A DNA stretch of 64,000 nt from Ylistrum balloti (GCF_031769215.1 NW_026782001.1:62001-126000), one strand, 5' to 3'. Shown: positions 16,078-61,700, counted from the first letter of the stretch. Notes: generated by a model not told the origin, from the sequence alone. Translations and numbers: made by a program.

Positions 16078-16925
16078 AGTACTGACTCCCTGTCACCACA
16101 AGGAGAGTAATATAAGTAATAACTCCTTGCCATTGGACAGAGAGGCACTAACTCTCTGTCACCACAAGGAGTACCATAGAGGCACTAACTCTCTGTCACC
16201 TCAAGGAGTACCATAGAGGTGCTAACTTCCTGTCACCACAGGTAGTACCATAGAGGCACTATCTCACTGATACCACAAGATGATTCATAGAGGCACTAAC
16301 ACCCTGTCACCACAAGGAGATTCGTAGAGGCACTAACTCCCTGTCACCACAAGGAGATTCGTAGAGGCAAGGAGATTTCATAGAAGTGCTAACTCCCTGT
16401 CACCACTGGTAGTGTCACAGAGGCACTATCTCACTGTTATCACAAGGAGATTCGTAGAGGCACTAACTCCCTGTCACCACAAGGAGATTCATAGAGGCAC
16501 TAACTCCCTGTCACCACAAGGAGATTCGGAGAGACACTAACTCCCTGTTACCACAAGGAGATTCGTAAAGGCACTAACTCCCTGTCACCACAAGGAGATT
16601 TGTAGCGGCACTAACTCCCTGTCACCACAAGGAGATTTGTAGAGGCACTAACTCCCTGTCACCACAAGGAGATTCGTAAAGGCACTAACTCCCTGTCACC
16701 ACAAGGAGATTTCATAGAGGTGCTAACTCCCTGTCACCACTGGTAGTGTCACGGAGGCACTATCTCACTGTTACCACAAGGAGATTCATAGAGGTACTAT
16801 CTCTATGTCAGGGTCTTTGAGGTACTACAGTATCTCCCTGTTGCCGCAAGGAGATTCATAAAGTTACCAACTCCCTTTCACCATCAGCTGGGTTATAGAA
16901 GAACTTACTCCTTGTCATCAGTAGA
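16078..16925. repeat. 37-bp minisatellite (GAGATTCGTAGAGGCACTAACTCCCTGTCACCACAAG), about 22 copies, degenerate at the edges
   Basis: Unit read directly; central copies are nearly identical. Confidence 0.93.
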
Positions 16926-17178: not shown

Positions 17179-20100
17179 ATGGCAGGTGGAAACAAAGCAG
17201 CACGCGTTGTGTTTTTGATATGTGATTTCATTTTCCTGGTAAGTACATTGTTTTGAAACCTATTCCATATCCAATTTGCTACATGATAAAACTACATATC
17301 CCATCCCAGCTATCTTTCCCTAATCCATGTAAGATTAATAGAATCTTTCACTCCCTTTGGGGTGAGACAGGGGGATCTCAACCCGAGGGGGGGATTATTA
17401 TGTTGTCAAACACGAGGATTGTAAAATACGAAATAGAATGTTTGTAAACATAAACTTGTAGACAATATATGAATATAGTGTCGAGGCCGTCTCAACTGCG
17501 TCATGCTTAATTGTGATATCCCGCACAAATATAATTCCCATTAACGGTACAGTACAACACAAAAGGCATAATATTAATGATAAAAAACAATTTTAATGTG
17601 ACAGTATGGATGAGATGACTTAAATATATACACAAAATCAACACATATTATTAAATTGTTATTTTACAATGACGTCATTTACATGTCAAGTTCCACTTCC
17701 GGGTCAAGATAGTGACGTCACATTATTGTTGAGAACGCGCAAGGAGCGTGTGTAGCTTGTTTTAACCCTAGGGTGATATAGAAAAATCACACAACGTTAA
17801 AAACTGTGGATATCCCTGTCCGGGGTAAGATAAACAGTTATCTCATCCCTCGCAACCATAGGATCGCCCTGTAAAATTTCTGAGAAATTCATTTATTACA
17901 TATCTATATAGTATTGACTCTGTAGACCTTGATTGTAACATGCCTACAGAGTCCATTGCAAGCTGACTGAAGTTAACATTTACACTGAATAATATAAACT
18001 ATTTCAATTTTTGATTACAGTTAATGGGAATAGGCATATTCATAGCTGGAATATACCTGAAGGTCTCTCGGGCTGACTTCACAGAGGTGCTAGACAGCAG
18101 GGAGTTTAACTTTGCCACAGCACTGATGGTGTCCGCTGGAATTATTGTGGTTGTTGTTGCCATTATTGGTTTGATTGGGGAGCGCCTCCAGAATCAATGT
18201 GTACTTGGAGTCGTAAGTGTCTTCATCTTCTAATTGTGTCGAGTTTAAAGTTGGTAGGTTATTAATTGTTACTTGTAGTTTTCCCAAAACAGACAGTTGT
18301 GTTTTTATTTTTTGTTGCCTTTCTAGTCATGGTATGATGTCTATCCACCTGGTATCATTTTTTTCAGTAAAACAACTTGCATCATAACTGAAAGGTCCAG
18401 GGTCATGATGATAAGTCAGTAGCATGCTGGGATAAATTAACATCGACTTCTTTTCATGTCACAGGGGTCAAATGTGTTAAAATGTTTAAACAACTTCTTC
18501 TCATAAACAAAGAAGCCTTTAGTCATAATAGACCATTAGCATGCTCGAATGAAGGTATACAAACTTTGTTCAAATGAATTACCTTGATCTACTTTCAAGG
18601 TCGCAGGGGTCAAATGTGTTAAAACATTTTAACAAATCATCTCAGAAGAAATGAGGCCTAGAGTCATATTAGATCATTAGAATGCAAGAATGATGGTTTA
18701 CAAAGTTTGTTAAAATGAATGACCTTGATCTATTTTCAAGGTCACAGGGGTCAGATGTGTTAAACATTTTAACAACTTCATCTCAGAAGAAAAGAAGCCC
18801 AGAGTCATATTAGACTATTAGCATTCAAGAATGAAGGTTTACAAAGTTTGTTCAAATGAATGACCTTGATCTACATTCAAGTTCGCAATGGTCAGATGTA
18901 TTTAAGTCTTATCAACAAATTCTTATCAGTAACCAATAGCCCAAGGTCATGATGTTAGGTCAGTGTCCTAGAAGCATCCTAGAATAAAGGCTTCAAAATA
19001 TGTTTAATTGAATTATTTTTACTGATACAAAAGGCAACAGATGTCAAATATATCAACTTCTTTAAGGCTTTCTTGAATAAACAATAAATCAATTGTTCTT
19101 TTGTTTCACCTACAACATGCTTTAAAGATGTAGAATTGATTTTGGGATAAACATGATAATTACCATAATGAACTTGTTCCAGTGATGTCTTCTCTTCATA
19201 TACTGCAGAGAAGGTTAGAAATACAGGCCGATTAAGAAAAGAAATCCAATATTTATTTCAAGAACTGTTTCTCTGAATGGGAGTAAATATTTGTCATGGT
19301 TTAAGTTTGGCCCCTTTTTCTCTTTTATCAATAGAGTGAAATTAAAAGGTGGGTAAACATTTTAGTACAGATTTAAGACTTGGGGGTGGGGGGGGGGGAG
19401 GGGAATAGTTGTCTCTAAGGGCAGAAAAAAACCCTTGGACAAATATTTCTCTGTTTAAAATATTGATGATAGGAATTGTAAAACAAAATACAGACGATTC
19501 CTTCTAATTTCTGTGTTTGTTTTTAACCATTTCTTGGTTAATTCTCTTTTTTGCATGGATGTTTTTTATTTCAGTACCTGATTTGTGTTATACTGATCTT
19601 CTGTATGGAACTTGCAGCTGGGATTACTGGAGCCATCTACAGAAATAAGGTAGGTACCTCAATAGTCATTTAGTTTGGTGTTTTTGTATGTCTCAAGCTC
19701 CTGTCAAACAATGTTGTGTCCGAAGTAGCATCGGATGTTTTCAATTGTCAATAATTTAGTGTGGAATTATCAATGTCACCGGGGTCGTTATAGACAACAC
19801 ACACTGAGGTTCTTGTTTTCAGTTTGTTTATTTCATAAATAAGGATGAAACCTACAAAGGTAAAACAAAGAACATCACAGTGCCAAAACGGACCATACAA
19901 CAACTGGCACACCAAATCGATTCATGCACCAACGTTCAAGCACACACATATCACTTACCAGGCCTCCCACCGCAGTCGCTATATAAGTTCCCTTTGCAGG
20001 GGTATACAATGGTAAACACACAAGTATAGCAGTTCTCGCTAGCATGGTCAGAGCTCGAGTGACGGGTTGTTTAGGGACCGGGGCGGTATTAGGGGGTAAG

Positions 20101-23803: not shown

Positions 23804-26800
23804 TCATCGTTGGCTTTGGACCGTAAGGTTTGCGTAAATAGGTCGTGTCGTTGGAGTATCATAATCTGATTGTCCTATATTGGAGTTGCTGTACATGTGT
23901 AAAGACTCATACGAGACCTTATCTCGTTTTTCAGGTACTTGTTCATAGGCATGTTGGGGTTCCATAGTATTTCCGTAGAGATGAAGACTGTCATATGCTT
24001 CAGGAGGAGAGGTGGAGACGTTCTGTTCAAAATCCTGATACGATTCTGAAAATAAATCAAACGACAAACAGAATTATTTCGTTGTTTTTCTCTAAAAAGG
24101 AACTTGGCAACCTCCATCTTTTGATCTTTACTTGATGTTTTTATCTTTCCATTACTGTCCACTTTTTTCAGCTCTTTCCGTGTTATTATATCGACTAGTG
24201 AATGAATATTGCAGTGACATTGTAATACATTATTTTTGAATGACCCGTCCAGTACTTTCTACAAACAGTGATGACCATATACAGAATGAAATCCATGACG
24301 GACCCTCCTTGTCAATATTTTCCATCAGTTGCCATTTTGTTTTTTCTTAATCTGTCCCATCTAGTTCTCTAGAAATAACGACAACAATCTTTAGGTGTCA
24401 ATCCAATATGACAGATTTTTAGGGAAATGTACACATCAACCTCTCAGGATATAACGTTATCAAACATTAACGAAGTCCAAGCTACGCCCCGTTTTTAAAT
24501 TAACATATAGGTATTAAGGAAAAGGGAACACGCAAATGAAGTTTCAGAATGAACCATACGTGCTTATAGCGAAACAACAAACGTGAGAACCGTTTAAGGA
24601 CGGACGGATGGACGGACGAACAGCCACCATCATCAGAGGATGAAGAGACATATACATGTTCTAAAGCTTTGCCACATTTACAGCGTATACATAGTGAATG
24701 TCCCCTTTTTTCAAGGCGCTGCATTTTTTTTGGTACTGTGCATGTACATACTTTTCTATATCATATCTTTTATATTTTCGTGATGATTCTGTACTAATTA
24801 ATTTGAACAGATAGGCACACAACAGTTTTTTGCGAATTTTGTGTCGTTTTTTGACACCTAGCAATTAAGAATGGACTGTTGCTTGTCAGACATATCATCG
24901 TTGCTGGTAATGTGTACAACCACCCCCTACCCCTCCACTTCCTTGAATGAAGTGTTTTCCCAATGTCGCATAATTTGGGATGTGAAAAAAAACGCTATCT
25001 ACAAAAACCTAAACAAACATGATAAAAGTATTTTAATAAAGCGGTTTTCTCGGTTTAGTTTGTTTGAATTAATTGAAAAAACGAACCTCTATAATAATAC
25101 TCTGTAGGTTAAAATGTGAAATTAATAAATATTCACCATTATCCTGTGAAGTTGCACCTTCTGCTGCGGGTTTGACATATACACGGCCATTACTTGTCAA
25201 GTTCTTTGTATCACTGAAAATTAAATGCATCTATAACTTAAAATCAAAGTTTATTATTATTTTTTACTAAAATCACTTCATAACGTAATCTTTTTTTCTG
25301 CAAACAGTCAAAAAGGCGAGTTATGTCCAAATTTGATATTCGAATATGCTTGAATGCTGATTCGTCTTCATTCATCACAGAATTCTTCGTGCTATACAAG
25401 ACTTCACAAACGATGTACAATGACAAATCAGCTGTATGTCTTTTTTATTGGTCTGGCGACATGTCAATAATTTGGTTTTTATTATTTTTGATTAGAGTTA
25501 TGTTGCAATCATTGTTACCTCAAAAAATTGTTTCAACAGTTCTATCTTATATACAAACTTTATAGAGATACGATCAAACTATTTTTAAAATTCATATACA
25601 ATAAAGACAAACATGATAACTAGTGGTTTTCACAGTAATTAATAAGTAGAAGGTTTTGTCCATCGATTTTGTTGTCAGGGTACCTGTGTTATCGATCTTT
25701 ATTCCATCTTCGAAAGTGATATCCATTACAGTACTTATCTAATGGAATTATGTTACCATGGTTATATACTCACTCTAAGGGATTCTTCTTTCGTTTGTAT
25801 CTGACCCTGAGTAGCAATACCGCCATGACAACAGCAGCCAGCACCACCAGAGGTATCCCTATAGACAGTCCGGTGGAGGCAGGGTTGTCTTGCTCGTCTC
25901 CCTCTTCTGCGTTCCCGACGTTTGTCTCTTCTCCGGATCCCTCGGTGACGTCCTCTGCTTGTGTAGTGGTTGGTGCAACAGTGGTGGTAGTGGGCGTGGT
26001 TGTTACAAGTGGCTCGGTTGTAGTGATGGTGTTAGTGGTTATTTCAGTTCGTACGACTGTTGTAATCTGTCTTTTAGTAGTGGTGACTGTAATTGGGGCA
26101 TCTGTAACGTAGACATTGTCTGAAATAAACGTTTTAGATTTAAATCGTTTGTATTGAGAAAAAATCTCGTCGATTGTAAACGTTAGAAATGCACACGAGA
26201 TGAGTCAAATCCGCTTGACAGGAATTCCTAACTACATTTTCATCTTCATTTTTTATGTAAGCACTAATTCCTAAGTGCAGTTCATATATATATACTCTCA
26301 ACAGGTCGTCCCTAGTGTATGTGAGGCGTGTGCATGTTTTGTGTGACTTTCCGAAAGACTGTTGTATCTTCGTGTAAACTTTAAATGTTATGAGTGTGGT
26401 GTCTTGCTGGACATCACATCTGGTCACAATATACTGACAGATGATAAACCAGTTGCCATACTCTTATAATGCTGATTGTTAAACAGAGAGTTGTTACCAG
26501 CATTTTGTAGACTCTGGTGTGTCTCGGCCAGGGGACAGAACCCAAAACCTTCCTCGCAGGGGGAAACGCCCAAATAAAGGTAAAAAGTGAGGCGGTGTCA
26601 TGGGAAACAGTAGGAAGAACAAGCGTAATTTAGAAAGAAAAGATCCCAAATGTAGTCGCCTCTTAGGAATCATGCAATTGGAGAGAGCAGGTACAATTAT
26701 TAAGACCTGTCTCCAGGACAATTATACTGAACATGTCAAGATGATGATACATTTATTTATCACACGACGTCCTTAATATTATGTAGAAAGTTTGCATATT

Positions 26801-29713
26801 ACATCTACGTAATCATAAGCTAATGTGGGTCAGGGACAATGAAATGACGTTACACGATCACAGGTTAAAAATTGACACCCACAGATTCCGATATTGACAA
26901 AGGGACTTGGTGCGATCTCTCAACCCACGGTATTATAATGACACGTTAATACCGGGGGTCGGGAATACGTCATTGTACATAGTGACATAACGCTGGAGAC
27001 TACGCATGTTTAGTAATATAACATTATAAATAAGTTTGAGGATTATACACACATATTTGAGTATACTATACCATGAATATATACTTCTGGTATACATATA
27101 TTTATATAAGTATGACTTATACAACAAGCTGTTTCTCTTAGTAAGACAAGTACTCCTACAGACAATGACAAACGGACACGGTGGCTGTCTGAATCATTCT
27201 CCAATACAAAGGTCAAAGTGTGTGTACAACATGCCTATATACACATATAACCTGAATTTCTGAAGAGATTAGCCTTTTTACATACTGGACTCGCCAACTT
27301 TTAGTAAAGATGAGTGGATCAATGTCCAGGAAATGAACACATTATTATTTCATTATCGTATCCTTAATTTTGTTGCCTCGAAATTGAGACGGAATTCTTA
27401 AATATAATGGACGCTCAATAACAGAACAAGGTTTTGACATAGATGGATTTTTCCAATAAAAGCTTTTGATATAACGGGATCGGAAGTTTTGGACTTTAGA
27501 ATATATAAATAAAACGAAATTCGCCATCTACTTCAGTATAAAAGTTACACTTCATCATATCTCTCAAATTCTACAGTCAAAGAATGGGTGGGTGTGAAGT
27601 CAGGAAGTTATGACCTGTTTAAAAATATCGGTAACATTGATGTTACAATTATGATAAGTTGTGATAATATGGCTACATCTGACCTTGTTTAGATTCCCAT
27701 GCTTGTAACGGTTGACTTTATATATTAACACACATGTTAAATGTTTCAACATTACAGTTTTTTCAAAGCTCACCCAAACTTATATGTACACATGTATGTA
27801 TGCACTGTGACAGATAGGTCACACACATACAACGTTACAGGAAATAGTTGTATAAAAGAAACGCAAGGAAAAGATAAATTAAACTGAGGCATGAAACTGT
27901 TTCGTCCTTGTAGGAGTCTTCATTGATACCAGGGCTTAAATAATATAGCGACTGGCTGACGAAAAAAAGTTGGCCGAAATTAAGCCGAAATATGTATGGA
28001 GAAGAACACATACCCCATTATCTAAACGATATAATTTATTCATTCTTTTTTAATTTTCAATTCTAGATGTATTCAGAATAAGACTGTGTCACTATTCATC
28101 AGAATTAAAACAGAACATACGTGGCAACTTAATTGCAATTATCATGATGACCTTCCCAGCTTGGATTGAAGATGTAGACGTTTACATAGATATAAATTAT
28201 TTCTCGTTTTACATACAGTCATCATGAATTCCATTCTTACCTTTGACACACCGTGTTATCCCTCGATTCTTACCTTTGACACACCGTGCTATCCCTCGAT
28301 TCTTACCTTTGACACACCGTGCTATCCCTCGATTCTTAACTTTGACACACCGTGCTATCCCTCGATCTTACCTTTGACACACATTGCTATCCCTCGATCC
28401 TTACCTTTGACACACCGTGCTATCCCTCGATCCTTACCTTTGACACACCGTGCTATCCCTCGATTCTTACCTTTGACACACCGTGCTATCCCTCGATTCT
28501 TACCTTTGACACACCGTGTTATCCCTCGATTCTTACCTTTGACACACCGTGCTATCCCTCGATTCTTACATTTGACACACCGTGCTATCCCTCGATTCTT
28601 ACCTTTGACACACCGTGCTATACCTCGATTCTTACCTTTGACACACCGTGCTATCCCTCGATCCTTACCTTTGACACCGTGCTATCCCTCGATTCTTACC
28701 TTTGACACACCGTGCTATCCCTTGATTCTTACCGTTGACACACCGTGCTATCCCTTGATTCTTACCTTTGACACACCGTGCTATCCCTCGATTCTTACCT
28801 TTGACACACCGTGCTATCCCTCGATTCTTACCTTTGACACACCGTGCTATCCCTCGATTCTTACCTTTGACACACCGTGCTATCCCTCGATTCTTACCTT
28901 TGACACACCGTGCTATCCCTCGATTCTTACCTTTGACACACCGTGCTATCCCTCGATTCTTACCTTTGACACACCGTGCTATCCCTCGATTCTTACCTTT
29001 GACACACCGTGCTATCCCTCGATTCTTACCTTTGACACACCGTACTATCCCTCGATTCTTACCTTTGACACACCGTGCTATACCTCGATTCTTACCTTTG
29101 ACACACCGTGCTATCCCTCGTAGTGAATCAGGAATACAGCATGCCACCCTTATATTGTTTATCACTAAAGTTTGTCTGTAAATAGTAACAAAATCAGTCC
29201 TTGTAGTTCATGTTGAATACCGCATTACACGTAATCGTATTGTTTCATATTAAAATACATATAAAAATTAATAAATACTGCGACCAATGGAAAATATTAC
29301 ATAGAATAAATTATATCGGTGAATGAAAAAGCCAGATATGTTTCATTACATTAAAGTACACTTTGATATAATATTCTGAAGATCCATATCGGATGTCTTC
29401 TTTATTTGGTGTTCGAGTTTTTAACTTACTCCAATGACATCGAGATCAACGAATTTTTTTTTGTATTGAGACTTTCAACTGTACTCTTTCCTATTTCCTC
29501 TATTTTGAAACTAGAACCTGACATCACACAGACAAAAGCGATAATTTACCTTTCCTTGAAAACATCAAAATTGGCTATTAACTAGAAGGTTTAGAATAAG
29601 ACCAATGCTTACCTGGTAGTGCCCTCGGTACAATTAATGCGCCTCTGCGCCTCTGTCAAGTATGAGAAATGTACTAGCAACAGCATAACGAAGGAAGGCT
29701 TCAGATAATCCAT
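23804..29713 (-). CDS. Gene A: uncharacterised type-I membrane receptor, 281 aa using the first donor. Signal peptide, small 4-Cys (EMI/Nimrod-like) domain, Thr-rich mucin stalk, TM, multi-tyrosine tail. Exons 29713-29613, 29175-29096, 26119-25774, 25213-25137, 24045-23804.
   Basis: MDYLKPSFVMLLLVHFSYLTEA-QRRINCTEGTTR/QTLVINNIRVACCIPDSLRGIARCVK/DNVYVTDAPITVTTT...EGSGEE...GLSIGIPLVVLAAVVMAVLLL-RVRYKRKK/.../ESYQDF..AYDSL..AYEQV..VSYESL..DYDTP..IYANL. Four GT-AG introns with matching phases 2,1,2,1; 846 nt with no internal stop. Confidence 0.82.
26300..26600 (-). mobile_element. Degenerate tRNA-derived SINE
   Basis: Plus strand TTTGTAGACTCTGGTGTGTCTCGGCCAGGGGACAGAACCC...GAGGCGG resembles the reverse complement of a tRNA-head SINE with A/B boxes, as seen in mollusc SINEs. 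Boundaries approximate. Confidence 0.55.
28233..29120. repeat. 33-bp minisatellite (minus strand AATCGAGGGATAGCACGGTGTGTCAAAG|GTAAG), about 27 copies, straddling the exon 2/intron 2 boundary of gene A
   Basis: Unit read directly; it includes the last exon codons and the GTAAG donor. Confidence 0.96.
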
Positions 29714-31487
29714 GGCTTCTGCAATCTGATTGAAGTAAAGTATATAAGAATTTCCTAATTATTATGACGCTTACTTAATATGGAGTAAGAATTGGGTTTT
29801 ATACTGAAAACAGAAGACTTACGGTCAAATTTCAAATAAGTATGTGATACATGTTAATGAATTTAGGGTTATGGTTCCCTAGATAAAAAATATCTACATT
29901 TCAATAGAAAACTGCATATTTCTGAATTTAGCAAAATATTTAAGCGACTTTCTGTTTCTCTCAATTGGTTCCTATATATTGTAGGTTATCAGAGGCGACT
30001 AACGTGGTGTCCCATGTTGAATCGGCACCATTTTCTACAATGATGTATCTGCTGCAATTTTCACAAAACCTGATAACCTTTTTTATAGTTTTTTCCCTGC
30101 TAACTACTATTTTTTGACAATGCGTCCATTTACACCGTACAAAACACCCAGGCAGTGTCGATGACGTAAAACTATTCACAAAACACAAACAACAACAACA
30201 AAGATATGTGGGCATAGTCGCTAATACTCAATCATATAGAATGTAATATTTAGCTACAACTCTCCAAGTAAACTTAAATAACTACTATAATTACCTGAGT
30301 GTGAAAAATGTGTTATATGCTCAGATGGTTCTGGTCATGTCGGGTAACGATTTAGAAATCCACAAATCGGTATAGGTGACGTCCAGCAATGAGACTTGGA
30401 GACAAACGAGAATGAATCAGCTTACGATGAGTACAACCTGGGAACGACGAACGTCGGCTTGAGTCGATACATGACATTACAGGAAGTAAGTAGGAAAACC
30501 GTACTCACGGAACTCCATATGGATGGTGAGTGCCAGTCAGTCGTATCTGAACTTCCGGTATACTTAAGTAAGTAAATAATCACATTAGCAATCAATCAGA
30601 CATGAAGCAATCTCAGTGGACAGGTCATTTTATGTAAAATGTTTGCAAGCCAACTACAAATGAATTTACAGGAGAATTTAAACAACAACAGGGACATATA
30701 ATATACGGGTAAGAGAGAGACTTTCTATATCTCTTTGTAAATATACACCAAATAAATACGAGTTAATTAGCCTTGATGTTTCCATATGCCATTTATCTAA
30801 ATGTACATAGATAATCAATTCAAAACAGGAGTAGACAGCTGAAGAATTTTCAAACTGAGCATGTTAACGTGAACTACTTATTGCTCGTATCAATTTTCAC
30901 GAGTGCCAGAAGTGCCTTTCCGGCCATAGTTCACCTTGTCAGTATATTAAAACGCTTGAAATGATAATGACATGCATGGAATAGATATATATTTACACAA
31001 CAGTTGTAATAATTAATTGATGTTTTGGAGTTGAATTATAATCAAATATTGTGGTTAAAAAAGCCTTATATTATAATCTGCGTGCACTAAACTCAAACCA
31101 TAGCACGCCAACTCCTAACTTACACATGCAAAACATTCTGCTCTCTTCAACATGCTACTTTGAACTGTATTTACAGTTTCACCAACCCTTCACAGCAATC
31201 ACTCAACAGTTACGCAATAGTTATTGTTTTAGAACAATCTTTAACTTTTATTTTTTTGATGTCCTGTATATTGGTACGTCAGATTGTTGTGTTGTTTACC
31301 AACGTCAGTCTTTGTGCGGAAAACATTTATGCTGCAAAGGATGCCAACGTGTACACAACCATGTTGGAATTACACCATGTGTAAACTTTCATCGTCAAAA
31401 ACCCCTCTCTTATAGAATTGATATAGATCTGATTGATAACTCGTGGACCTTATATTTAAGTGATTGACTTTAGGCGGACATATTGCA

Positions 31488-32294
31488 TTATTTTTCAACA
31501 TAATCACCCCCAGTATCCACAAATTTTAGCCAGCTATATTTATGGGCCTCAATGCCACTTTTAGAGAAGAGCTTTTCTTGACCGTTCAGAAAGTCCTCCA
31601 TTGTATGTATCACCTGGCCAAAATTGGCACCGGAAATGGCTTTTGTAAGCTGATGGAGCGAGGTCATGCAAATAAGGCGGATGCTCAATTAATTCAAAGC
31701 CACCATCGTTAATGGCAGCCTTGTGTACAGAGGCTGTCCTGGTGGAACAACAAATGTTTTGCAGATGATTACTAGAATGCTATTAGTATCCCAGGAAACC
31801 GATGCCATAATTTTTCCAGCTTCCAGTCTTTGCCTTCTACAGCGGTGGTGAACCAGGGTTTTCCCATTGTTTAGGCTGTTGTTTGGCCTCTGGGGTGAAA
31901 TGATGGGCCCACGTTTGATCCATCGTCACAAACCTCTTCAGAAAGTTAGCAGAATTTGCCTCTAAAATGTTCAGATTAGCACGCGACAAAGTCTACCTTG
32001 TGTGCTTCTGATCATCTGTCAGAAGTTTCGGTAGCCAATGGGCTGGGTGCTTTCTTAATGCAAGATCTTCTCTAAGAATGGAATTGTTTTCTTGTGAAAT
32101 CCCAACTATATTGGTTATACATGTATATCTCTCTGTAACTGGCCTGTCAGCCAAAACAATATCATTAACTTTATTGACCATTTCTGGGGTTGCAACAGTG
32201 ACATATGAGCATATGAAGGTACATCATTCCCTAGTGTTGCTAGAGCTTTCTCATGCAAATATTGAATCACTTCTCTTTCAGCGATTTCGTCCAT
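31488..32294 (-). mobile_element. Decayed mariner (Tc1/mariner) transposase with internal deletions and frameshifts; element probably spans about 31420-33010
   Basis: Fragments MDEIAEREVIQYLHEK, IVLADRPVTER..VGISQE, WLPKLLTDDQKHTR, FLKRFVTMDQTWAHHFTPE, AGKIMASVSWD and KSGIEA..W.KFVDTGGDYVEK* match mariner motifs (WVPHEL-like, DETW, C-terminal GDYVEK). Confidence 0.88.
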
Positions 32295-32411
32295 TTTGCA
32301 GAAGTCACTTGCCTTATATACTTTAGAGGGCTACCTCATAAACTGATCAAATGACACTAGTCTTCGGGTACACAGCTTTAAATAGTCAGGGAATAGTAGA
32401 GCTGATGAGGA

Positions 32412-32870
32412 ACACCGTGCTATCCCTCGATTCTTACCTTTGACACACCGTGCTATCCCTCGATTCTTACCTTTGACACACCGTGCTATCCCTCGATCTT
32501 ACCTTTGACACACATTGCTATCCCTCGATCCTTACCTTTGACACACCGTGCTATCCCTCGATCCTTACCTTTGACACACCGTGCTATCCCTCGATTCTTA
32601 CCTTTGACACACCGTGCTATCCCTCGATCTTACCTTTGACACACCGTGCTATCCACTCGATCCTTACCTTTGACACACCGTGCTATCCCTCGATTCTTAC
32701 CTTTGACACACCGTGCTATCCCTCTTATTCTATTGCCTTTGACACACCGTGCTATCCCTCGCTTCTTACCTTTGACACACCGTGCTATCCCTCGATTCTT
32801 ACCTTTGACACACCGTGCTATCCCTCGATTCTTACCTTTGACACACCGTGCTATCCCTCGATTCTTACCT
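32412..32870. repeat. Second copy of the 33-bp array (about 14 units), flanked by an 83-bp direct duplication (32332-32414 and 32866-32948)
   Basis: Same unit and same order of variant units as 28340-28480; the flanking duplicates differ by one base. Confidence 0.95.
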
Positions 32871-34049
32871 CATAAACTGATCAAATGACACTAGTCTTCG
32901 GGTACACAGCTTTAAATAGTCAAGGAATAGTAGAGCTGATGAGGAACATTTCTGCCTAACTTCAAGGAACACGCCTTATCTCTTCATAAGTTATTTCTGT
33001 TTACTCGGAAAGTATCTTTTTATAAGAGGCATTACGTAAGTATTGTTGTCAGGTAGAAAATACTTATACATCTTGTAATGGATATCACATCACGGAAAAT
33101 CCAGAGAAGGTGTGACCGCCATGACATCTTTTTAAATGAATACTTCTTTGTACCACTAACATACAGAAAATATGTATTAATAATCCAAGACAAACGAATA
33201 AAGTCAGTGTAGCTTGGTGCATACGACGAGATCATGCACTCTGTACGTACTTCAAATTGGACAGTGGAGTTCCGGTATATGATAAAGATACATTACATTA
33301 CTGTGATTCACGCTCCTATTTATGTTTGTAGAGAAACTGTATGACAATATATGGAGATACCGGATGAAAGAGTAAACATCATGGACATTGCTGATGATTT
33401 TCTGTTGACGTAAATACAAGGGACAAGTATTCATTTACCAGTAACAGGTAAGTTATCAACACTTCTCATTAGTGAAGCATCAACGCTTTCATATCAACTC
33501 TTAAGACAATACAATCAGTTGACCTCAGATAACCGATTTGGAAATTCAGGCATCAAACTGATGTGAAAAAGTAAGACAATTCATAGGATATTAAAAATAA
33601 AAAATATATATCTGTAACATAACAAAGATGTTTGTATTCTGAGACTAGTCTTTTGTACAGTACTATTGAGCGACATGGTAAATGTCGTTGAAAAGTTAAG
33701 GCGTGTTACTTCCGCCATACATCACCGTTGTTAAGTTGATAATTTATACCTGACAGTTCCTATAAATCATATGCTTGCTCCATAGATGTCATGAACAAAT
33801 ATAAGAAAATGGCTTCATCGGAAACACACGCAGAGAAATAATAGGGTAATAACATCAAGATTTCAAATCTTACAGTGTGAATATCTAAATGTGATCACCT
33901 ACATGAGTGACTTCTCAATGTCATCACCTACAGTGATACCATCCAAATGTTTTCACATATAGTTGTATCTTCTAAATTTCATTAATTACGATGTGAACAT
34001 TTAAATAACAACAAATCCCTCTCCTACTCCAACCAAGAAAAAAGATTAG

Positions 34050-36722
34050 GTATCGCTCGCGATTGTATACCCTATAAGTCTGCAGTAATAAGACCACTTA
34101 ACCCGCCTTGGATGTGCAATAAAATCCGTCGACTCATTCGTAAACGCAAACGATCTTACAAAATTGCCCGTTCTTCAAATTCTCCTTCTGACTGGTTGAA
34201 ATTTCGACGCTTAAGGAATAAGAGTGCTAAGAAGGAATACTTGTGTAAACTTACCGCTTCCCTCCGCGACAAAAATAATCTGTATCGAAATTCTTGGTGG
34301 AATACTATCAAATCATTTATAGGCATTTCCAAAAAGTCAAATTCCATTCCTGCTTTATTATGTAACGGTATCCAGTACGTATCAGTTGGTGATAAAGCTA
34401 TGCTATTCAATGATTACTTCACAGCCCAGTCTACTGTGAATGATACACACTCCCAAATTCCTCCCAACCAAATTCCTGATAATAAACTTAGTGATATTAT
34501 TATAACTGAAACGGATATTCGAGATGTCTTAATATCACTTGACACTTCAAAAGCTACAGGACCTGACTTGTTGAACCCACGTTTACTTAAAGAAGGTGCC
34601 AACGAATTAGTCTTACCACTTTGTATTTTATTCAACTCTTCTTTACAACTTGGTATATTTCCTAATTCTTGGAAGATAGCCAATGTAATACCTGTACATA
34701 AAAAGAATGAAAAAAATGATGTTAAAAATTACCGTCCTATTTCTTTACTTAGTATCGTTGGCAAAGTGATGGAAAGGTGTGTATTTAAATATGTACATAA
34801 TTTTCTAAATAAATATAATTTGATAAAAGATTGCCAGTCAGGATTTAGACCGGGGGATCCTACAATTAACCAGCTACCAAATATAACTAATGACTTGGGA
34901 AGGGCAATAGATTCTGGGAGGGAAGTACGTATTGTTTTTTGCGATATAAGCAAGGCTTTTGATCGTGTCTGGCACAAAGGTCTTATACATAAACTTGTCA
35001 ATATTGGTTTAGATGGTAAAGTAATTGAATGGTTCAAAAACTACTTAACACATAGAAAACAAAAAGTTATTATTAATGGGGCTGAGTCCTATTTGTCTGA
35101 TATCACGGCGGCAGTTCCTCAAGGGTCAATTTTAGGGCCTCTTTTGTTTGTACTTTTTATTAACGATATAGTCACCGAAATTGGGTCTATAATCAAGCTA
35201 TTTGCTGATGATACGTCTGTATATGTTATTGTTGATTCACCTTTGTTGGCTGCTGAACTTCTGAATAGTGACATGGAGAAAATTTATTTATGGTCTAAAG
35301 CTTGGCTTGTTGATTTTAACCCTCAAAAAACTGAATGTATGATTGTTTCTAGAAAAGAGATCCCCTTAATCATCCTAAATTTTACTTTGATAATACCCCC
35401 ATAACAAATGTAAACTCTCATAGACACTTGGGTGTAACTCTATCTCGCGACTGTAACTGGACTACTCACGTTGATATTATTATTGGTCAAGTAACATCTA
35501 AGCTTAATATGATACGGAAATTAAAATTTACTCTAGACAGGAAAAGTTTGCAGATTTTATATTTTACCTTTATTAGGCCTGTAATTGAATACGCTGATAT
35601 TGTCTGGGATAATTTAAGCAACGAGTATGTAAATAAGCTAGAGAAAATAAATCAGGAGGCTGCCAGAATAATATGTGGGGCTACTAAATTAACTAATATA
35701 GATAAACTGTATATAGATACCGGGTGGGAAACACTAAGCGAAAGAAGGAGAAAACACAAATTAATCCAATTTTTTAAAAATGTTTCATGGTAGAACGCCT
35801 GAATATCTGTCCCGTCTGGTACCTCCTAACATATCTGACACATAATTATGGCACAAGACATGGTAACAATTTAATCGGTGTTAGATGTATGTCCGAATTC
35901 TATCGCCATTCATTTTTACCCTCAGTGATTACACTTTGGAACAATATTCCTGAAGAAATTCGTAACAATCCCTCACTATTTTCATTCAAAAAGTATCTTA
36001 ATATCAATTCCAGGGGACGTCCGCCTGAATATTATTATGTAGGGTTGAGACTAGACCAAATATACCATACTAGATTACGGCTTGGATGTAGTTCCTTAAA
36101 AGGTCAACTCTTTCGGAGAAACCTAGTTGATAGTCCCATATGTGCATGTGGATACCCATTTGAAGATAGTTTCCATTTCCTGTTGCAGTGTGCCAATCAC
36201 TCTGCCCCAAGACGAAGGTATTTAACATCATTGACTTACCATCTTAGTGTTGATTTACTTTTGTTTGGCGATCCACTTTTATCTTATGACCAAAATGTAG
36301 AAATATTCATAGCTACTCAAAAATTTATAAAATCGAGTGAAAGATTTAGAAATAGTACCTAGCATCCTATCAATCCAACCGGGGAAATTCATCAATTCAT
36401 GTATTCATGTTTACAATATTTATACTTATAAATTATGCACTCTTGCCTAATTTTATATACCCCCTTTTCTTTTCTCTTCTTCCATTTTCTCTTCCTTTAG
36501 TTGTAAACTTGTTCGTTTTATATTATAAACATTAGTTAAGTTACATTATAATCAATTCACTATATGCTGTCAGTGTAAGGGTTAACATGTAAAATTGAAA
36601 TTGCTGTATTGATGAGACGGACTTAGAATAAGTACATTTGTACTTGTTTCCAAATCATCTTTATGTTATGTATGTCACCAATATGTACATGTTTCACTTG
36701 CCAATACAAATAAAGTGTAAAC
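34050..36722 (+). mobile_element. 5'-truncated CR1/L2-clade LINE; reverse transcriptase broken by frameshifts (ORFs 34112-35404, 35428-35793, 35787-36362)
   Basis: RT motifs KATGPD, NYRPISLLSIVGKVMER, DISKAFDRVWH, VPQGSILGPLLF, LFADD; C-terminal CACG..EDSFHFLLQC; AT-rich 3' UTR ending in AATAAA. Confidence 0.95.
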
Positions 36723-48500: not shown

Positions 48501-51500
48501 TCACCTGTCGGTACAATCAATATCATAATAAAGGAAAAACTAGGGAATATCCATGTACATCTTTTTATGTCTGTTCATTAGACCACTACACATACAGAAA
48601 AACTCATTACTGCAAATTACTAGGACTGATTTTTATCACCTCCAAAATACCTTCATTTTTCATGACAACTTAATGGTTTTGTAGGCTAAAGAACCAGACT
48701 GTGTTGACAAACTGATGCACTGTATTAAACAAGCTGTGCCACTGTTTTCAGTAAGTATGACATACAAATTTACTATGGTCCTTATTGTCTATGTTTCTCC
48801 GTTTGATTTCAAAGATATACTCGATAGCATTTCAAGTATGACAATTTTGATATTACAAGGAATCAGAAAACAGGTTGTTTTGTATTGTCATATTCAAATA
48901 TAACAAATGGGAATCCCAAAATTAAGCATAAGTAATTATAACAATAAATAAGAGAAGGGATATGGCTATCAGGGTTCCTTGAAGTAAGTAAACCCAAAGT
49001 GTAGCAAGGATCAAGTATTTAAACTTAAAACTGAATTGAGAACTAAAAGATTGTAAAGATGTGACAATGTCTGACGTTAAAAAGATTGTGGAAGATTGTG
49101 CTAAAATAATCCTTGTGGAATTATTCAGATCTGGTAAATATCATCAATAAATATGCCAAATCCTTTATACTTTAATTTACATATCATCTTTTGATTTTCA
49201 GAAAAATGTACATTCAAAGGCTTTTGTTGGTTACATTTGTGATAATGTATTACCATCATTAGACGAACTTGCAAGTCCAGAGGAAGGAGTAGATGCTCAG
49301 CTAGAAATGTTGAAATTGTTTTCAGAGATTTCAGAATTTACTGGGGATCTGGAAAATTTAGAAGACCGAGTGACAAATGTATACAACTGTTTAATTGTAA
49401 GTGTTATTTGCACCCAAATTCATAGTGAAATTTACCTTTGTTTGGATTTTTGTGCAGCAATATTTGAGTGTGGAATTTATGCCTCACCCCTAGTCTTCAA
49501 TGCTGCTATATATCTCTGTTTATAAGGACTCACCCAAATTGCAAAAAATGTGTCCTGAACCCTCCTGAAAAAAATCATAAAAAAATATCTGACCCTCTCA
49601 TGAAGAAAACTTGTTTTGTTCATTGGTAGATATATTACATGTTTATTAGTGAAAAAAGTCAACAAGTATTCAAATTTTGATTTAATAAAAGACAAACATA
49701 CATCGGAAAATGGCTTGTTGTTCAATGTCTATGAACTGAGTAGGTTTATGATTTAGCTCTGTATTATTCATTTTTAGAATTACATGCCTGTACCTCCAGC
49801 GGAAGAAAACGATGGACTTTCAGTGAACGAACAACCAAAATTCCATTTCTCTTTTGTGGAGTGTTTAATGTTTGCTTTCCATCAAATTGCAAGAAAATTA
49901 CCAGGCTTTCTAATAGATGATGCTAATGCTGAGAGATTAAAGGATTTCAAATTAAGGTATTAATCAAATATATATTCAATATACCTGTACTACTTCAAAT
50001 TTGTAACTATGGAACAAAATCATTACTAACCTGTATATTTTCATTGTACGAGTATTTACACCATATTTCAAGTTGTAGCATTATGACACAACGTTTCTGT
50101 GTTGTAACTTCCTTTTAAATGTTAAGTTGTAAGTACTTATTTTTTTATGTCCCCCAACTTATATTGTGTTTGCTCCATTTCTTATTATTATTATTTATAT
50201 TATTCTTATTTCTTCCTCTTTCCTCCGCCGGTGAGGTTTCCGACGCGTTTCTCAAAAGCTATTGCTTGGAATTTAACAAAACTTCACATACATATTCATA
50301 CATGCGAGGCGGAGTGCAGGCCCCTTGAATTTTTCCAATCGGTCATCTGAGTGGCCAGCTGTGGTCAAAATTTGGCCAAATTATAGATATTGTCCGGTTT
50401 TCATGAAAATTGGTATACATGTATTAGGTGGCACTAGGAGCAAAATGGCATAGTCCATTTTTCATTTGGCCATCGATCGGTCAGCTGTGGTCAAAATTTG
50501 ACCAAATTTTAGGTATTGTCCGGTTTTCATGAAAATTGGTATACATGTATTAGGTGGCACTAGGAGCAAAATGGCATAGTCCATTTTTCATTCGGCCATC
50601 GATCGGTCAGCTGTGGTCAAAATTTGACCAAATTTTAGATATTGTCCGGTTTTCATGAAAATTGGTATACATGTATTAGGTGGCACTAGGAGCAAAATGG
50701 CATAGTCCATTTTTCATTCGGCCATCGATCGGTCAGCTGTGGTCAAAATTTGACCAAATTTTAGATATTGTCCGGTTTTCATGAAAATTGGTATACATGT
50801 ATTAGGTGGCACTAGGAGCAAAATGGCATAGTCCATTTTTCATTCGGCCATCGATCGGTCAGCTGTGGTCAAAATTTGGCCAAATTTTAGATATTGTCCG
50901 ATTTTCGTGAAAATTGGTATATATGTATTAGGTGGCACTGGCGGAGGATAATGGCATAGTCCATGTTTGGCATGACTGCAGGTCTGATTATTTTTATCAT
51001 TTACTGCTGAAGGGGTCATTTTGGGGACATTTGTAATGGTCCTCATTACAATTAGTACTTATTACAAAGTGATTTAAACATCAAAATCATATTGGAAGTA
51101 AAGATCTTTTGGCGTTGTTGACTGGTTACTAGTGTTTTGTGAGATTTGGGTGTTTCATAGAGGTCCCAATATCTGCCTGTTTTGCCTAAACAGTTTTATT
51201 TCATAAAGAATTATATCGGAACTGAGAATTCTTAAATACCAGCAGTAAAGGGACTATGTTGTTTTATGAATACAGTTAGGTACTCCTTATGTCTTAACAG
51301 ATTCAGATTTAAGATTGGATAAACATTTCCGTTATTACTTACAGATTACAGTATTTTGCTCGAGGTGTACAGGTATATATCAAACAACTACGACAAGCAC
51401 TTCAGGGGAAGTCTGGTGATGTGTTAAAAACTGACGAGGTAAGTATTGATGCTACACACCTGTCGTCTTCTCTGTAACAGGTCTTGGTGATGTTTACATA

Positions 51501-58747: not shown

Positions 58748-61700
58748 CTATAACATAATTTTGACCAGGCACAGTAGTGTGGTCAGTAACACACTGCTGC
58801 TGACTGTCTGCTGACCAGCAGACTGAAGGAAGGGGTAGAAGAAATCATATGGCAGTTTGGCGAGGAAGATAGGTGGTTCTCCTACGTAGCCAGTGCTAGG
58901 CTTTGATACATCTATAAATGTCACTGATTGGCTGATCTCCACGGACTGGGTGAGGGCAGAGCTTCCAGGAGAACAAAACACGCCAATACACTGAAATCAA
59001 AGACCAGATTGGACCACAATTAGAGAAAAAAGTTTTATGATCTACAGAAGTCTAACTAATGTTTTCTCTTCAAAAATCAAATGATCAACTGATCAACCAT
59101 GTTTACATGCATTTTAAATTAATCCCAAAAAATGCAGGTTTTCTCAGAAATTTCCATAACATTGAATTTGAGACAATAACATAGCAAAAACCTAACATTT
59201 AGAGTAAAATATTCTATCAAGTTGCCTATGAAAATGTATTTAGGAGAGTTTTGAGTCTCTGTTGAAAACGTTGACCAACCAATTCAAAACATGGTTATTT
59301 TTAAATCTGATTTTTTAATCTCTACTTTGACAAGAATTAAGGAAAGATCTAGACCCATCACCTTATTCCTAACCTTTGTTGTATGTAATATGTGATATTC
59401 TTGAATTATGTCTCAATAGAGTAGTATTTAGTACTGTACCTTGAAAAGAATTTGAATGGACAGTATTTTTTAAAATGTTCATAACAATAAAGTGGAAAAT
59501 TTACTTTAGCCAGAGGATTTTTATATACTTACCCTGAATGTAACAAGCTGTGGATCTTCATAATTAAACTGAACACCAAGAATTTTCCTTTGTGGGTTGA
59601 CCAGTGCTCCAATGTTTGCGTAAAGAATCTGGACATGCATGCCAGTTGTCACAGAACAGGTCGGTCCAGTCATGGAACTGATCACCTACAAAACAGATGT
59701 ATTGCAAAAAACAACATGTCAGACTATTACTGAATGTGTAACATATAACAACAGTAAACTATTTCTACGTCAATGTTGTACCATCTAGTATTTGTTTAGG
59801 AGAACATGAAAGGTAAAATAACACACCAGGACCAACAAACAGTAATGCAATAATTGTATTATCATATATACAGTAACATATTTCTGGATTTATCTAAATA
59901 ATAAGCCCATACTTGTATTGAGCCCTTGATATCTCTTTGCTGTTTAGTATAAATAACAAAAAATTTGATTCAATTGTTCTGTGATAAACCTGCCCTGAGG
60001 TACACACATTAAGTCAGAATGACAGCCGCCAGGGTTTAGAGCAAAATAAATTCAAGAATATACATAGTCAAGCCAGTTTTGTATAAGATATACATTGCCT
60101 AGTCAGCACTGTATAAGACATACATAGCCTAGTCAGTACTGTATAAGATATACATTGCCTAGTCAGTACTGTATAAGATATACACAGTCTAGCCAGTACT
60201 GTATAAGATATACAGTCTAGTCAGTACTGTATAAGATATACATAGTCTAGTCAGTACTGTATAAGATATACATAGTCTAGTCAGTGCTGTATAAGATATA
60301 CATAGTCTAGTCAGTACTGTATATGATATACATAGTCTAGTCAGTACTGTATAAGATATACACTGCGTAGTCAGTACTGTATAAGATATACATAGTCTAG
60401 TCAGTACTGTATAAGACATACATAGTCTAGTCAGTACTGTATAAGACATACATTGTCTAGTCAGTACTGTATAAGATATACATAGTCTAGCCAGTACTGT
60501 ATAAGATATATATAGTCTAGCCAGTACTGTATAAGATATACATAGTCTAGTCAGTACTGTATAAGACATACATAGTCTAGTCAGTACAGTATAAGATATA
60601 CATAGTCTAGCCAGTCTAGTCAGTACTGTATATGATATACACAGTCTAGTCAGTACTGTATAAGACATACACAGTCTAGTCAGTACTGTATAAGATATAC
60701 ATAGTCTAGTCAGTACTGTATAAGATATACACAGTCTAGTCAGTACTGTATAAGATAGATATACATAGTCTAGCCAGTACTGTATAAGATATTACCTGTG
60801 CTGCAGTAGGTGCATTCCTGATGATAGGTACCCAATCACCAGTGACTAGAGGGTCAGAGTTACCAAATATAGCCACAGATCTGTTACCAGGGTCATAAGT
60901 TACTCCGTCTAAACCCTCCAATGCATTGATTATCTGTTGTTCAATGGCAGTACAATACTCTGTCACATTTTCATAGTTGAATCTGACAAGAAGACAAAAC
61001 AAGTGTTACTTGCTTTCGAAATTTAACTTTTTAAAAAGAGAATTACTTCCCACATTTTTGCACTGCAGACCCATTGCTTTTTCATATTCTTGTTGTAAAA
61101 TCCTTAAAAACAGTTATTCAAATATGTAAGCAAAACGTGATATTGATTTTTGTCTCTACTCCAGATATCGGCATGGTTTTCTACACAAAATAAGAGATAC
61201 TATATTTACTGTTACATAAAATGTTTCATTTTACAAATCTTTGCCACTATTTACCCTCTCACTTGGTGGCAAATGCAACCACAGCATTAGACATTGTAAC
61301 ATAATACCTGGAAATACATTACATGATAGTAAAGAGAAACAAGATTCAAATTTGAATCCCCTGTGATGGTCACACAGCTGTAACCATGATTACCTTATCA
61401 GACAACCTGTCCTTACATCTTCTCCAAAGTTCACCTGAAGTCTGTTGGCTGAGCCAGTAGCACAGTCACCAGAGCCTGTTGACTTGACGAGGGTGAGGTC
61501 ATATAAACTCTCCGATATGGCAAAACTTAAAGAGAAAAATATATTTTGGTATTGTATTTATTTATAGTTACAATCAAGAATGAAATGTTTTGGTCCTAGT
61601 TTGTTATGGTTTAAGTGTACAAAAAACAAGGGGGATAACTGACTGTAAACTTTGTGTTCTGCTCTCAGTTACTATTTACTTAGTTTTATTAATAAAATAT

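What the first reader, a model, noticed from the sequence alone, without database searches (positions are those of the whole stretch)
28233..29175. Minisatellite made of an exon end plus splice donor: 13 tandem in-frame 5' splice sites in a receptor gene
Seen in sequence: exon 2 of gene A (29175-29096, minus) ends CGA GGG ATA GCA CGG TGT GTC AAA G|GTAAGAAT, and this exon-end plus donor is the 33-bp unit of an array of about 27 copies. Because 33 is a multiple of 3 and the frame is stop-free (ORF 28665-29165), donors at 29096, 29063, ... 28700 (13 sites, all phase 1) can each splice in frame to the exon at 26119. Each further donor adds GKNRGIARCVK (one Cys, four K/R). A 2-nt deletion near 28676 then creates a stop, so the distal donors would be non-productive. 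Inference: donor choice, together with copy-number variation between individuals, could tune ectodomain length, charge and Cys parity (odd Cys allowing covalent dimers), a VNTR-driven way to diversify a receptor. It may instead be neutral slippage with only the first donor used.
Basis: partly seen in the sequence, partly recalled or inferred. Interest (0 to 1): 0.85.

Follow-up and report, generated by a model that had tools for sequence, protein, structure and literature searches.

The report
Splice-donor minisatellite in scallop gene
A 33-base piece made of the end of a conserved exon plus its splice signal has been copied 27 times in a row into the following intron of a scallop membrane-protein gene; the structure is real, but this kind of repeat is already known in humans and amphioxus and nothing here shows that the extra splice signals are used.

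Summary
A 33-bp x 27.0 tandem array lies at 28233-29120. Its first unit is the last 25 nt of exon 2 plus the first 8 nt of intron 2 of a gene on the minus strand. That gene is NCBI LOC132545397 of the scallop Ylistrum balloti (281 aa), which the window reproduces exactly. Thirteen donors (29096 to 28700) are in phase 1 with an open frame. A 2-nt deletion then puts a stop at 28667-28665.

Exon 2 and its first donor are orthologous in Pecten maximus and Mizuhopecten yessoensis. Neither has the array, and every orthologous protein carries one copy of the motif. The array is therefore a young expansion in the Ylistrum lineage.

The functional reading, that donor choice tunes the ectodomain, could not be tested. 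The only public run served behaves as DNA, not RNA.

The kind is already known. In humans, IFI6/6-16, CBS, F7, LMNB2 and PDGFA carry minisatellites whose first monomer spans an exon-intron junction. Amphioxus has the same thing under the name "mirages". In the tested cases only the first donor, or the first three, are used.

This scan has already noted the same kind of array elsewhere in this genome (s1-258768, s1-262771).

Most likely this is a neutral intronic minisatellite in which the first donor dominates. It is a new member of a known kind, of modest interest.

The parts
29613..29713 (-). Exon 1, coding part: start codon, signal-peptide-like N-terminus, ends in phase 2, donor GTAAGC
   Evidence: tblastn of P0001; sequence; exact model
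29096..29175 (-). Exon 2 (80 nt; ...CCIPDSLRGIARCVK), ends in phase 1. Its last 25 nt are the exon part of the repeat unit
   Evidence: acceptor and donor orthologous in P. maximus and M. yessoensis
28233..29120 (-). 33-bp x 27.0 minisatellite. The first unit spans the exon 2/intron 2 junction; every unit but one carries AAG|GTAAG
28692..29120 (-). Proximal 13 units. Their donors are all phase 1 in an open frame. Units 4-11 are identical, which points to recent expansion or homogenisation
28661..28691 (-). 31-nt unit with a 2-nt deletion. It shifts the frame; the stop follows at 28667-28665
28233..28660 (-). Distal 13 units, behind the stop. They include a 32-nt unit (28365-28396) and a destroyed donor (GTTAAG, unit starting at 28364)
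25774..26119 (-). Exon 3: Thr-rich stalk, transmembrane helix, RVRYKRKK. Its acceptor at 26119 is the one all the array donors would join
25137..25213 (-). Exon 4
23804..24045 (-). Exon 5, coding part: Tyr-rich cytoplasmic tail and stop codon
32412..32870 (-). Second array of the same unit (13.8 copies), upstream of exon 1. It shares a run of derived unit variants with array 1 (28396-28462), so it is a copy of part of array 1
32332..32414 (.). 83-nt direct repeat on one side of array 2; its partner is at 32866-32948 (99% identical)
   Evidence: family D3

Best explanation
This is a minisatellite that spans an exon-intron boundary, of the 'mirage' or F7/IFI6 type. In the Ylistrum lineage, a 33-bp segment made of the last 25 nt of conserved exon 2 plus the first 8 nt of intron 2 was amplified. 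The likely route is replication slippage or unequal exchange (inferred). The result is 27 head-to-tail copies that now form the start of intron 2 of LOC132545397. That gene encodes a small type I membrane protein with a 4-Cys N-terminal module, a mucin-like stalk, a transmembrane helix and a Tyr-rich tail.

The array behaves as neutral intronic DNA. The exon-side half is young or homogenised; the distal half is decaying through substitutions, two frame-breaking indels and one dead donor.

The authentic, most upstream donor at 29096 is predicted to be the one mainly used. It is the orthologous site, it gives an 80-nt exon, and it is favoured by exon definition or 5'-to-3' selection (inferred from the human cases). 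At most, the next one or two donors contribute minor in-frame isoforms of +11 or +22 aa.

That the period is a multiple of 3 with an open frame is most simply chance, by my own estimate: about 1 in 3 for the period, and only three intron-derived codons (GGT AAG AAT) had to be stop-free.
For: - **Array and unit anatomy:**
- **Exon 2 and the first donor are authentic.** The five-exon GT-AG model reproduces NCBI protein P0001 exactly. The acceptor and donor align with those of P. maximus and M. yessoensis.
- **One motif copy in every orthologue.** P0002 to P0005 each have one copy of the LRGxARC motif. P0005 comes from a 1227-nt Logan contig with an uninterrupted ORF, so it is a spliced mRNA.
- **No array in the orthologous intron 2 of two scallops**. 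The sequence beyond the distal end of the array aligns weakly with the start of the P. maximus intron.
- **No annotated isoform with extra units** within 155-492 aa or 93-296 aa.
- **Neutral decay.** The proximal 13 units carry 5 substitutions and no indel. The distal 14 carry more substitutions, a 2-nt and a 1-nt deletion and a destroyed donor.
- **Not an assembly artefact.** A run from another individual (11 differences in about 700 bp) contains contigs that span unit-unit junctions, at 5-8.5 times the depth of the flank.
- **Precedent.** PMC1557585 reports that only the most upstream of the identical donors in F7 is used. It also reports that 6-16 and CBS use the first three, and LMNB2 and PDGFA only the authentic one. 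PMC3087553 reports that amphioxus 'mirages' do not disturb normal splicing.
Against: - No transcript of this species could be examined, so first-donor dominance is inferred, not shown. I do not know whether the NCBI model rests on RNA evidence.
- The donors are strong (AAG|GTAAGA) and the first eleven are practically identical in context. In human 6-16 and CBS two extra donors are used constitutively.
- The first 13 units keep the frame. That is also what selection on translated units would produce, although 0 of 13 against 2 of 14 units with indels is not significant.
- If the rule 'the donor nearest the acceptor wins' applied (my recollection of work on competing 5' splice sites, not checked here), distal non-productive donors would be used instead.
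Confidence: 0.68

Rival explanations
1. Several of the 13 in-frame donors are really used, giving a ladder of receptor isoforms that differ by GKNRGIARCVK units. Copy-number variation between individuals adds to this, so ectodomain length, charge and Cys parity are tuned.
For: Period 33 = 3 x 11. There are 13 identical strong donors in phase 1 with an open frame. In human 6-16/IFI6 and CBS, extra donors of such arrays are used (PMC1557585). Unit-word depth in another individual is lower relative to the flank than in the assembly (5-8.5x against 19-20x), which may reflect a length difference.
Against: No RNA evidence. There is a single annotated isoform using the first donor. All orthologues have one unit, and four Cys are invariant (C28, C46, C47, C58). 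An extra unit would add an unpaired Cys inside this conserved module. The array is absent in two other scallops. The distal units are decaying. In every documented case no more than three donors are used. The same kind of array is noted elsewhere in this genome, for example in two housekeeping genes (s1-258768, not checked here). That points to a general mutational process rather than something specific to receptors.
Confidence: 0.12
2. The array acts on expression rather than on the protein. It would be a row of 26 strong U1-binding sites at the start of the intron. These could act as decoy donors, sending part of the transcripts to out-of-frame splicing and decay. They could also change splicing efficiency, or pair with the exon body, so that array length sets the gene's output.
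For: Thirteen of the 26 intact donors are non-productive. The exon 2 body is predicted to pair with a downstream unit (MFE -46 kcal/mol, z = -2.9 against shuffles). A CBS repeat is reported to be associated with reduced enzyme activity (title of Lievers et al. 2001 in the reference list of PMC1557585).
Against: Purely inferential and nothing was measured. The predicted fold is of one short construct with a modest z-score. The F7 work shows downstream pseudo-sites staying silent without affecting normal splicing.
Confidence: 0.12
3. The array is a satellite carried by a mobile element, or an assembly artefact, that merely happens to abut an exon.
For: A second array of the same unit lies 3.3 kb away, next to what look like transposon remnants. 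A Logan contig of run X1 joins both flanks through a single unit.
Against: The exon part of the unit is homologous to the orthologous exon ends in two other scallops and encodes conserved residues (RGxARC). The unit therefore derives from the exon, not the reverse. Array 2 carries derived variants of array 1 and is the copy. Unit-unit junction words are present at 5-8.5x flank depth in an independent individual. The one-unit contig is what a k=31 assembler can produce from a 33-bp repeat, so it does not show absence.
Confidence: 0.04

Closest known systems
Human 6-16 (IFI6/G1P3) exon 2/intron 2 minisatellite (Turri, Cuin & Porter 1995, as cited in PMC1557585)
   Same: The first unit of the minisatellite spans the exon 2/intron 2 boundary, so the authentic donor is followed by about 25 identical pseudo-donors. 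The title of that paper says it 'provides multiple splice donor sites'. The copy number is similar (26 against 27).
   Different: In 6-16, use of the authentic donor plus the two nearest pseudo-sites is shown in transcripts. Here no transcript could be examined. From my own recollection, which I could not check because the paper is not held, the human unit is 12 nt. Here it is 33 nt, adding 11 aa with one Cys per unit. The host is a bivalve, not a mammal.
Human F7 intron 7 37-bp VNTR (PMC1557585)
   Same: The first monomer contains the exon-intron junction, the donors are identical and reiterated, and the array varies in length. It serves as a model for choice among identical 5' splice sites.
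   Different: F7 has 5-9 units of 37 bp, which is not a multiple of 3, and only 4 exon bases per unit. Only the most upstream donor is used. Here there are 27 units of 33 bp with 25 exon bases per unit, in frame, and usage is unknown.
Amphioxus 'mirages' (Adh3, globin genes; PMC3087553)
   Same: Minisatellite-like tandem duplications of exon-intron boundaries in an invertebrate. They recur across genes, are unstable in length, and are reported not to disturb regular splicing.
   Different: Mirages occur at both acceptor and donor boundaries, with units of 10-160 bp.
Human CBS intron 13 31-bp VNTR, LMNB2 100-bp repeat and PDGFA 81-bp repeat (as summarised in PMC1557585)
   Same: Arrays that reiterate an exon-intron junction.
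   Different: CBS uses two pseudo-sites. LMNB2 and PDGFA use only the authentic site. None has been described as an in-frame coding ladder in a receptor.

Membership tests
Exon-intron-boundary minisatellite ('mirage' / F7-, 6-16-type) | Head-to-tail tandem array with a minisatellite-sized unit (about 10-100 bp) | tested here: met
   33 bp x 27.0, 96% matches, score 1650
Exon-intron-boundary minisatellite ('mirage' / F7-, 6-16-type) | The first monomer spans an authentic exon-intron junction | tested here: met
   The unit is the last 25 nt of exon 2 plus the first 8 nt of intron 2. The exon model reproduces P0001 exactly, and the donor is orthologous in two scallops
Exon-intron-boundary minisatellite ('mirage' / F7-, 6-16-type) | [quoted passage not shown] | tested here: met
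   26 intact (A/C/T)|GTAAG donors at 33-nt spacing, and one destroyed
Exon-intron-boundary minisatellite ('mirage' / F7-, 6-16-type) | Length polymorphism between individuals (VNTR) | tested here: inconclusive
   In run X1, canonical unit words lie at 5-8.5x flank depth, against 19-20 copies in the window. Contig word depths from a k=31 assembly cannot give an array length
Exon-intron-boundary minisatellite ('mirage' / F7-, 6-16-type) | The authentic (most upstream) donor is used in mRNA | not testable with these tools
   No RNA run was served. Indirect support: the NCBI model and the orthologues have one unit
Multi-donor coding minisatellite (6-16/IFI6-like usage) | Extra units keep the reading frame | tested here: met
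   13 donors in phase 1 with an open frame up to 28700
Multi-donor coding minisatellite (6-16/IFI6-like usage) | Two or more donors are used in transcripts | not testable with these tools
   No transcript data. No annotated isoform with extra units
Dispersed or transposon-borne satellite | The unit originates outside the gene and occurs at unrelated loci | tested here: not met
   The exon part of the unit is homologous to the orthologous exons. The only other copy seen is a derived partial copy 3.3 kb away. A genome-wide search was not possible
   The Pfam scan of P0001 gives nothing above cut-off, only compositional matches to mucin/TM families. The ectodomain module has just 4 conserved Cys

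The most novel reading that the evidence does not exclude
The in-frame donor ladder is really used. Transcripts of this scallop membrane protein would carry 1, 2, 3 or more GKNRGIARCVK units depending on donor choice and on the individual's array length. That would be an invertebrate counterpart of the human 6-16 case, but with 11-aa, Cys-bearing units inserted into a conserved 4-Cys module of a putative signalling receptor. It would make a minisatellite-encoded source of differences between individuals in a receptor.
Probability: 0.1. Interest if true: 0.6.

Novelty: new member of a known kind. Interest (0 to 1): 0.3.

Why it matters
If the extra donors were used, this would be a clean natural system for studying how the spliceosome chooses among up to 13 identical, in-frame 5' splice sites. 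It would also be a case of a VNTR directly encoding protein length variation in an invertebrate receptor-like gene.

As things stand, it is a well-documented, datable example of a boundary-spanning minisatellite in a mollusc. It is absent in two other pectinids. It adds to this scan's earlier notes that such 'donor-echo' arrays recur in this scallop genome. That recurrence, rather than this single locus, is the more interesting open question: why do exon-donor junctions seed minisatellites?

Tried and rejected
- **RNA evidence.** The look-up of sequencing runs (kind rna) returned one run, X1, of unknown kind. It covers intron 1 evenly at depth 9.3, so it behaves as DNA. No splice junction could be read.
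- **Read laying.** I then laid 28758-29800, which holds 11 units. That used the single call allowed.
- **The one-unit contig.** The X1 contig joins the distal flank, one unit and exon 2. I could not decide whether this is a collapse by the k=31 assembler or a genuine one-unit allele.
- **Isoform search.** Searches with the array ORF and with P0001 found no protein with more than one unit.
- **P0004** (Argopecten) has no gene on record for fetching its locus.
- **Turri et al. 1995** (PMC306954) is not held. Its content is cited only through PMC1557585.
- **Pfam.** The scan of P0001 gave only sub-threshold compositional matches. The scan of three transposase-like fragments at 31491-32223 gave nothing.
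- **Rejected explanations.** Assembly artefact, transposon-borne satellite and chance ORF. On the last: three of the six frames of the unit are open, and only three intron-derived codons needed to be stop-free.
- **Recursive splicing.** I considered the AG|GTAAG sites as recursive splice sites and set the idea aside, because no pyrimidine tract precedes them.

Full report
**1. The observation**

Read on the minus strand, 29175-28233 shows ...CTA CGA GGG ATA GCA CGG TGT GTC AAA G|GTAAGAAT followed by the same 33 bases again and again. Tandem Repeats Finder reports a single array at 28233-29120: period 33, 27.0 copies, 96% matches, score 1650. The consensus unit with up to 3 mismatches is found 35 times in the window and never in 100 shuffles.

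A script listing every donor gives the following.
- There are 27 donor positions, 33 nt apart.
- The first 13 (last exon base 29096, 29063 ... 28700) are all phase 1 and lie ahead of any stop in the exon-2 frame.
- Unit 14 is 31 nt (GT lost from GGTGTGTC), so its donor is phase 2, and the frame stops at 28667-28665.
- Unit 23 is 32 nt.
- Unit 24 has lost its donor (GTTAAG).

Each extra unit would add GKNRGIARCVK.

**2. The gene**

A search with the translated array ORF found one protein, P0001. It is 'uncharacterized protein LOC132545397 [Ylistrum balloti]', 281 aa.

tblastn places its pieces in the window at 100% identity within exon bodies. A brute-force GT-AG model translates exactly to P0001:
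- E1 29713-29613
- E2 29175-29096
- E3 26119-25774
- E4 25213-25137
- E5 24045-23804

So the window comes from this scallop, 'exon 2' is the annotated exon, and the annotation uses the first donor.

The protein has a signal-peptide-like start, a short Cys-containing module, a Thr-rich stalk, one transmembrane helix and a Tyr-rich tail. Pfam finds nothing above its cut-offs, only compositional matches. 'Receptor' is therefore a reasonable inference from the architecture.

**3. Orthologues date the array**

A search with P0001 finds single orthologues in Pecten maximus (P0002), Mizuhopecten yessoensis (P0003) and Argopecten irradians (P0004). It also finds P0005, from a 1227-nt Logan contig whose ORF is uninterrupted, so it is a spliced mRNA of a more distant relative.
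- **One copy of the motif.** In the alignment the end of exon 2 is conserved: xIRVxCCIPxxLRGxARCxx, with C28, C46, C47 and C58 invariant. Every orthologue has exactly one copy.
- **Orthologous junction.** The genomic loci of P. maximus (L001) and M. yessoensis (L002) were fetched. The exon 2 acceptor (TATTTnCAG) and donor (A|GTAAG) align with those of the window.
- **No array in the orthologous intron.** Intron 2 of those two species has no repeat of the exon end. L001 has only an unrelated 26-bp array inside the intron.
- **Distal flank.** If the array is collapsed to one unit, the sequence beyond its distal end aligns weakly with the start of the P. maximus intron, ATGA...CTGT(A/T)TGTAA.

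The unit therefore derives from a conserved exon end. The array is an expansion that arose after Ylistrum split from those lineages.

**4. Internal structure**

The unit map shows units 4-11 identical to the consensus and only five substitutions in the first 13 units. The distal 14 units carry more substitutions, both indels and the dead donor.

This is the usual picture of a minisatellite with a recently expanded or homogenised block and an older, decaying end. It gives no sign of selection for the frame: 0 of 13 against 2 of 14 units with indels is not significant.

The open frame is not remarkable either. Three of the six frames of the unit are open. The exon part is open by definition, and only GGT AAG AAT had to lack a stop. 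A period divisible by 3 has a prior of about one third.

**5. A second array**

The same unit forms a 13.8-copy array at 32412-32870, upstream of exon 1. It contains the run 'GGAT, GGAT, 32-nt unit with AATG and a lost A' that is also found at 28462-28396 in array 1. It is therefore a copy of part of array 1. It sits between two 83-nt direct repeats that are 99% identical. The scan has noted this separately (s1-254329). For the present finding it shows that the array DNA has been copied as a block, and that the unit does not come from a mobile element.

**6. Independent reads**

Only one public run was served (X1, kind unknown). I then laid 28758-29800.
- **What the run is.** X1 covers intron 1 evenly at depth 9.3, so it behaves as DNA. 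It differs from the window at 11 positions plus a 2-nt indel in about 700 bp, so it comes from another individual or haplotype.
- **Tandem units are present.** Short contigs that span unit-unit junctions have depths of 49-79, which is 5-8.5 times the flank. The same 31-mers occur 19-20 times in the window. The tandem arrangement therefore exists outside this assembly, possibly with fewer canonical units.
- **An ambiguous contig.** One 2406-nt contig joins exon 2, one unit and the distal flank. With k = 31 and a 33-bp period, no word can tell one unit from many. This is either assembler collapse or a one-unit allele, and I cannot tell which.
- **No splicing information** could be obtained.

**7. 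How it most likely works**

What is shown: the array, its origin from the exon-donor junction, its youth, and the annotated use of the first donor.

What is inferred: the first donor is the one mainly used. The reasons are as follows.
- It is the ancestral site.
- It defines an 80-nt exon.
- Orthologues, and the one mRNA-derived relative, have one unit.
- Extra units would add an unpaired Cys to a conserved 4-Cys module.
- In the human cases summarised in PMC1557585, identical downstream donors stay silent (F7, LMNB2, PDGFA) or only the two nearest are used in addition (6-16, CBS).
- PMC3087553 reports that amphioxus 'mirages' do not disturb normal splicing.

Minor +11 or +22 aa isoforms remain quite possible, because the donors are strong (AAG|GTAAGA) and identical. 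Use of many donors as an adaptive tuning device is unsupported.

A regulatory effect of the array remains an open rival. It could work through decoy donors or RNA pairing. The exon 2 body is predicted to pair with a downstream unit, z = -2.9.

**8. Comparison with what is known, and novelty**

Minisatellites whose first monomer spans an exon-intron junction are an established kind. In humans they are described in 6-16/IFI6, CBS, F7, LMNB2 and PDGFA (PMC1557585 and its references 9-13). In amphioxus they are the 'mirages' (PMC3087553).

The idea that such an array 'provides multiple splice donor sites' is the title claim of Turri et al. 1995, cited there. I could not read that paper.

The same scan has already described such arrays elsewhere in this genome (s1-258768, s1-262771). 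The lead to 'mirages' and F7 came from s1-258768, and I checked both in the papers themselves.

This locus meets the structural criteria of the kind. Length polymorphism is inconclusive, and donor usage cannot be tested here. It is a new member of a known kind.

Its particular features are the 33-bp in-frame unit, the large exon share of the unit (25 of 33 nt), the 27 copies, and the secondary copy 3.3 kb away.

**9. Verdict**

Interest is modest.

Noticed in passing
window 32332-32948: The second array (32412-32870) sits between two 83-nt direct repeats that are 99% identical. Its proximal end breaks off inside a unit (CGAGGGATAGCACGGTGT|TCCTCATCAGC). The scan has already noted this as s1-254329. 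I confirmed the repeats and that array 2 shares derived unit variants with 28396-28462 of array 1.
   Followed up: partly
window 29088 / 28232 (run X1): A 2406-nt Logan contig from another individual joins the distal flank of the array to exon 2 through exactly one unit. This is either a collapse by the k=31 assembler or a real one-unit (ancestral-type) allele. Summed unit depth (about 180-205, against 9.3 on the flank) is roughly half of what the window's 41 units in both arrays would give.
   Followed up: partly
window 31491-32330, minus strand: Broken reading frames with motifs that I recall from mariner/Tc1-type transposases (for example ...HPPY.HDLAPS.Y...). They lie just downstream of array 2, and the 83-nt repeat lies next to their start. 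Pfam gave no hit for three of the fragments, so the label rests on recollection only.
   Followed up: partly
window 33986-36359, plus strand: A non-LTR retrotransposon remnant: a 472-aa stop-free stretch with a reverse-transcriptase domain (PF00078, E = 4.5e-29), followed by two further open frames. It lies between gene A and the putative paralogue on the plus strand. A second element that looks similar, with endonuclease- and RT-like ORFs, starts near 42725.
   Followed up: partly
window 37100-37140, plus strand: The neighbouring head-to-head gene has CIPDSHQNIGK followed by a GTGAGT donor. This resembles the CIPDSLRGIARCVK|GTAAG exon end of gene A, but no repeat follows it. It fits a paralogue in which the junction did not expand.
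   Followed up: no
window 28990-29180, minus strand: The unique body of exon 2 (GGUGGCAUGCUGUAUUCCUGAUUC) is predicted to pair with a downstream repeat unit, looping out the first donors (MFE -46 kcal/mol, z = -2.9). The significance is unknown.
   Followed up: no
window 16141-16810, 18458-18899, 50329-50968, 60058-60792; L002 7008-8822: Several other sizeable minisatellites occur in the window: 37 bp (5.8 + 11.9 copies in two overlapping rows), 141 bp x3, 126 bp x5 and 30 bp x24. There is also a 46-bp x 39.5 array in intron 4 of the M. yessoensis orthologue. By eye none carries a strong donor consensus. I did not check whether any abuts an exon.
   Followed up: no
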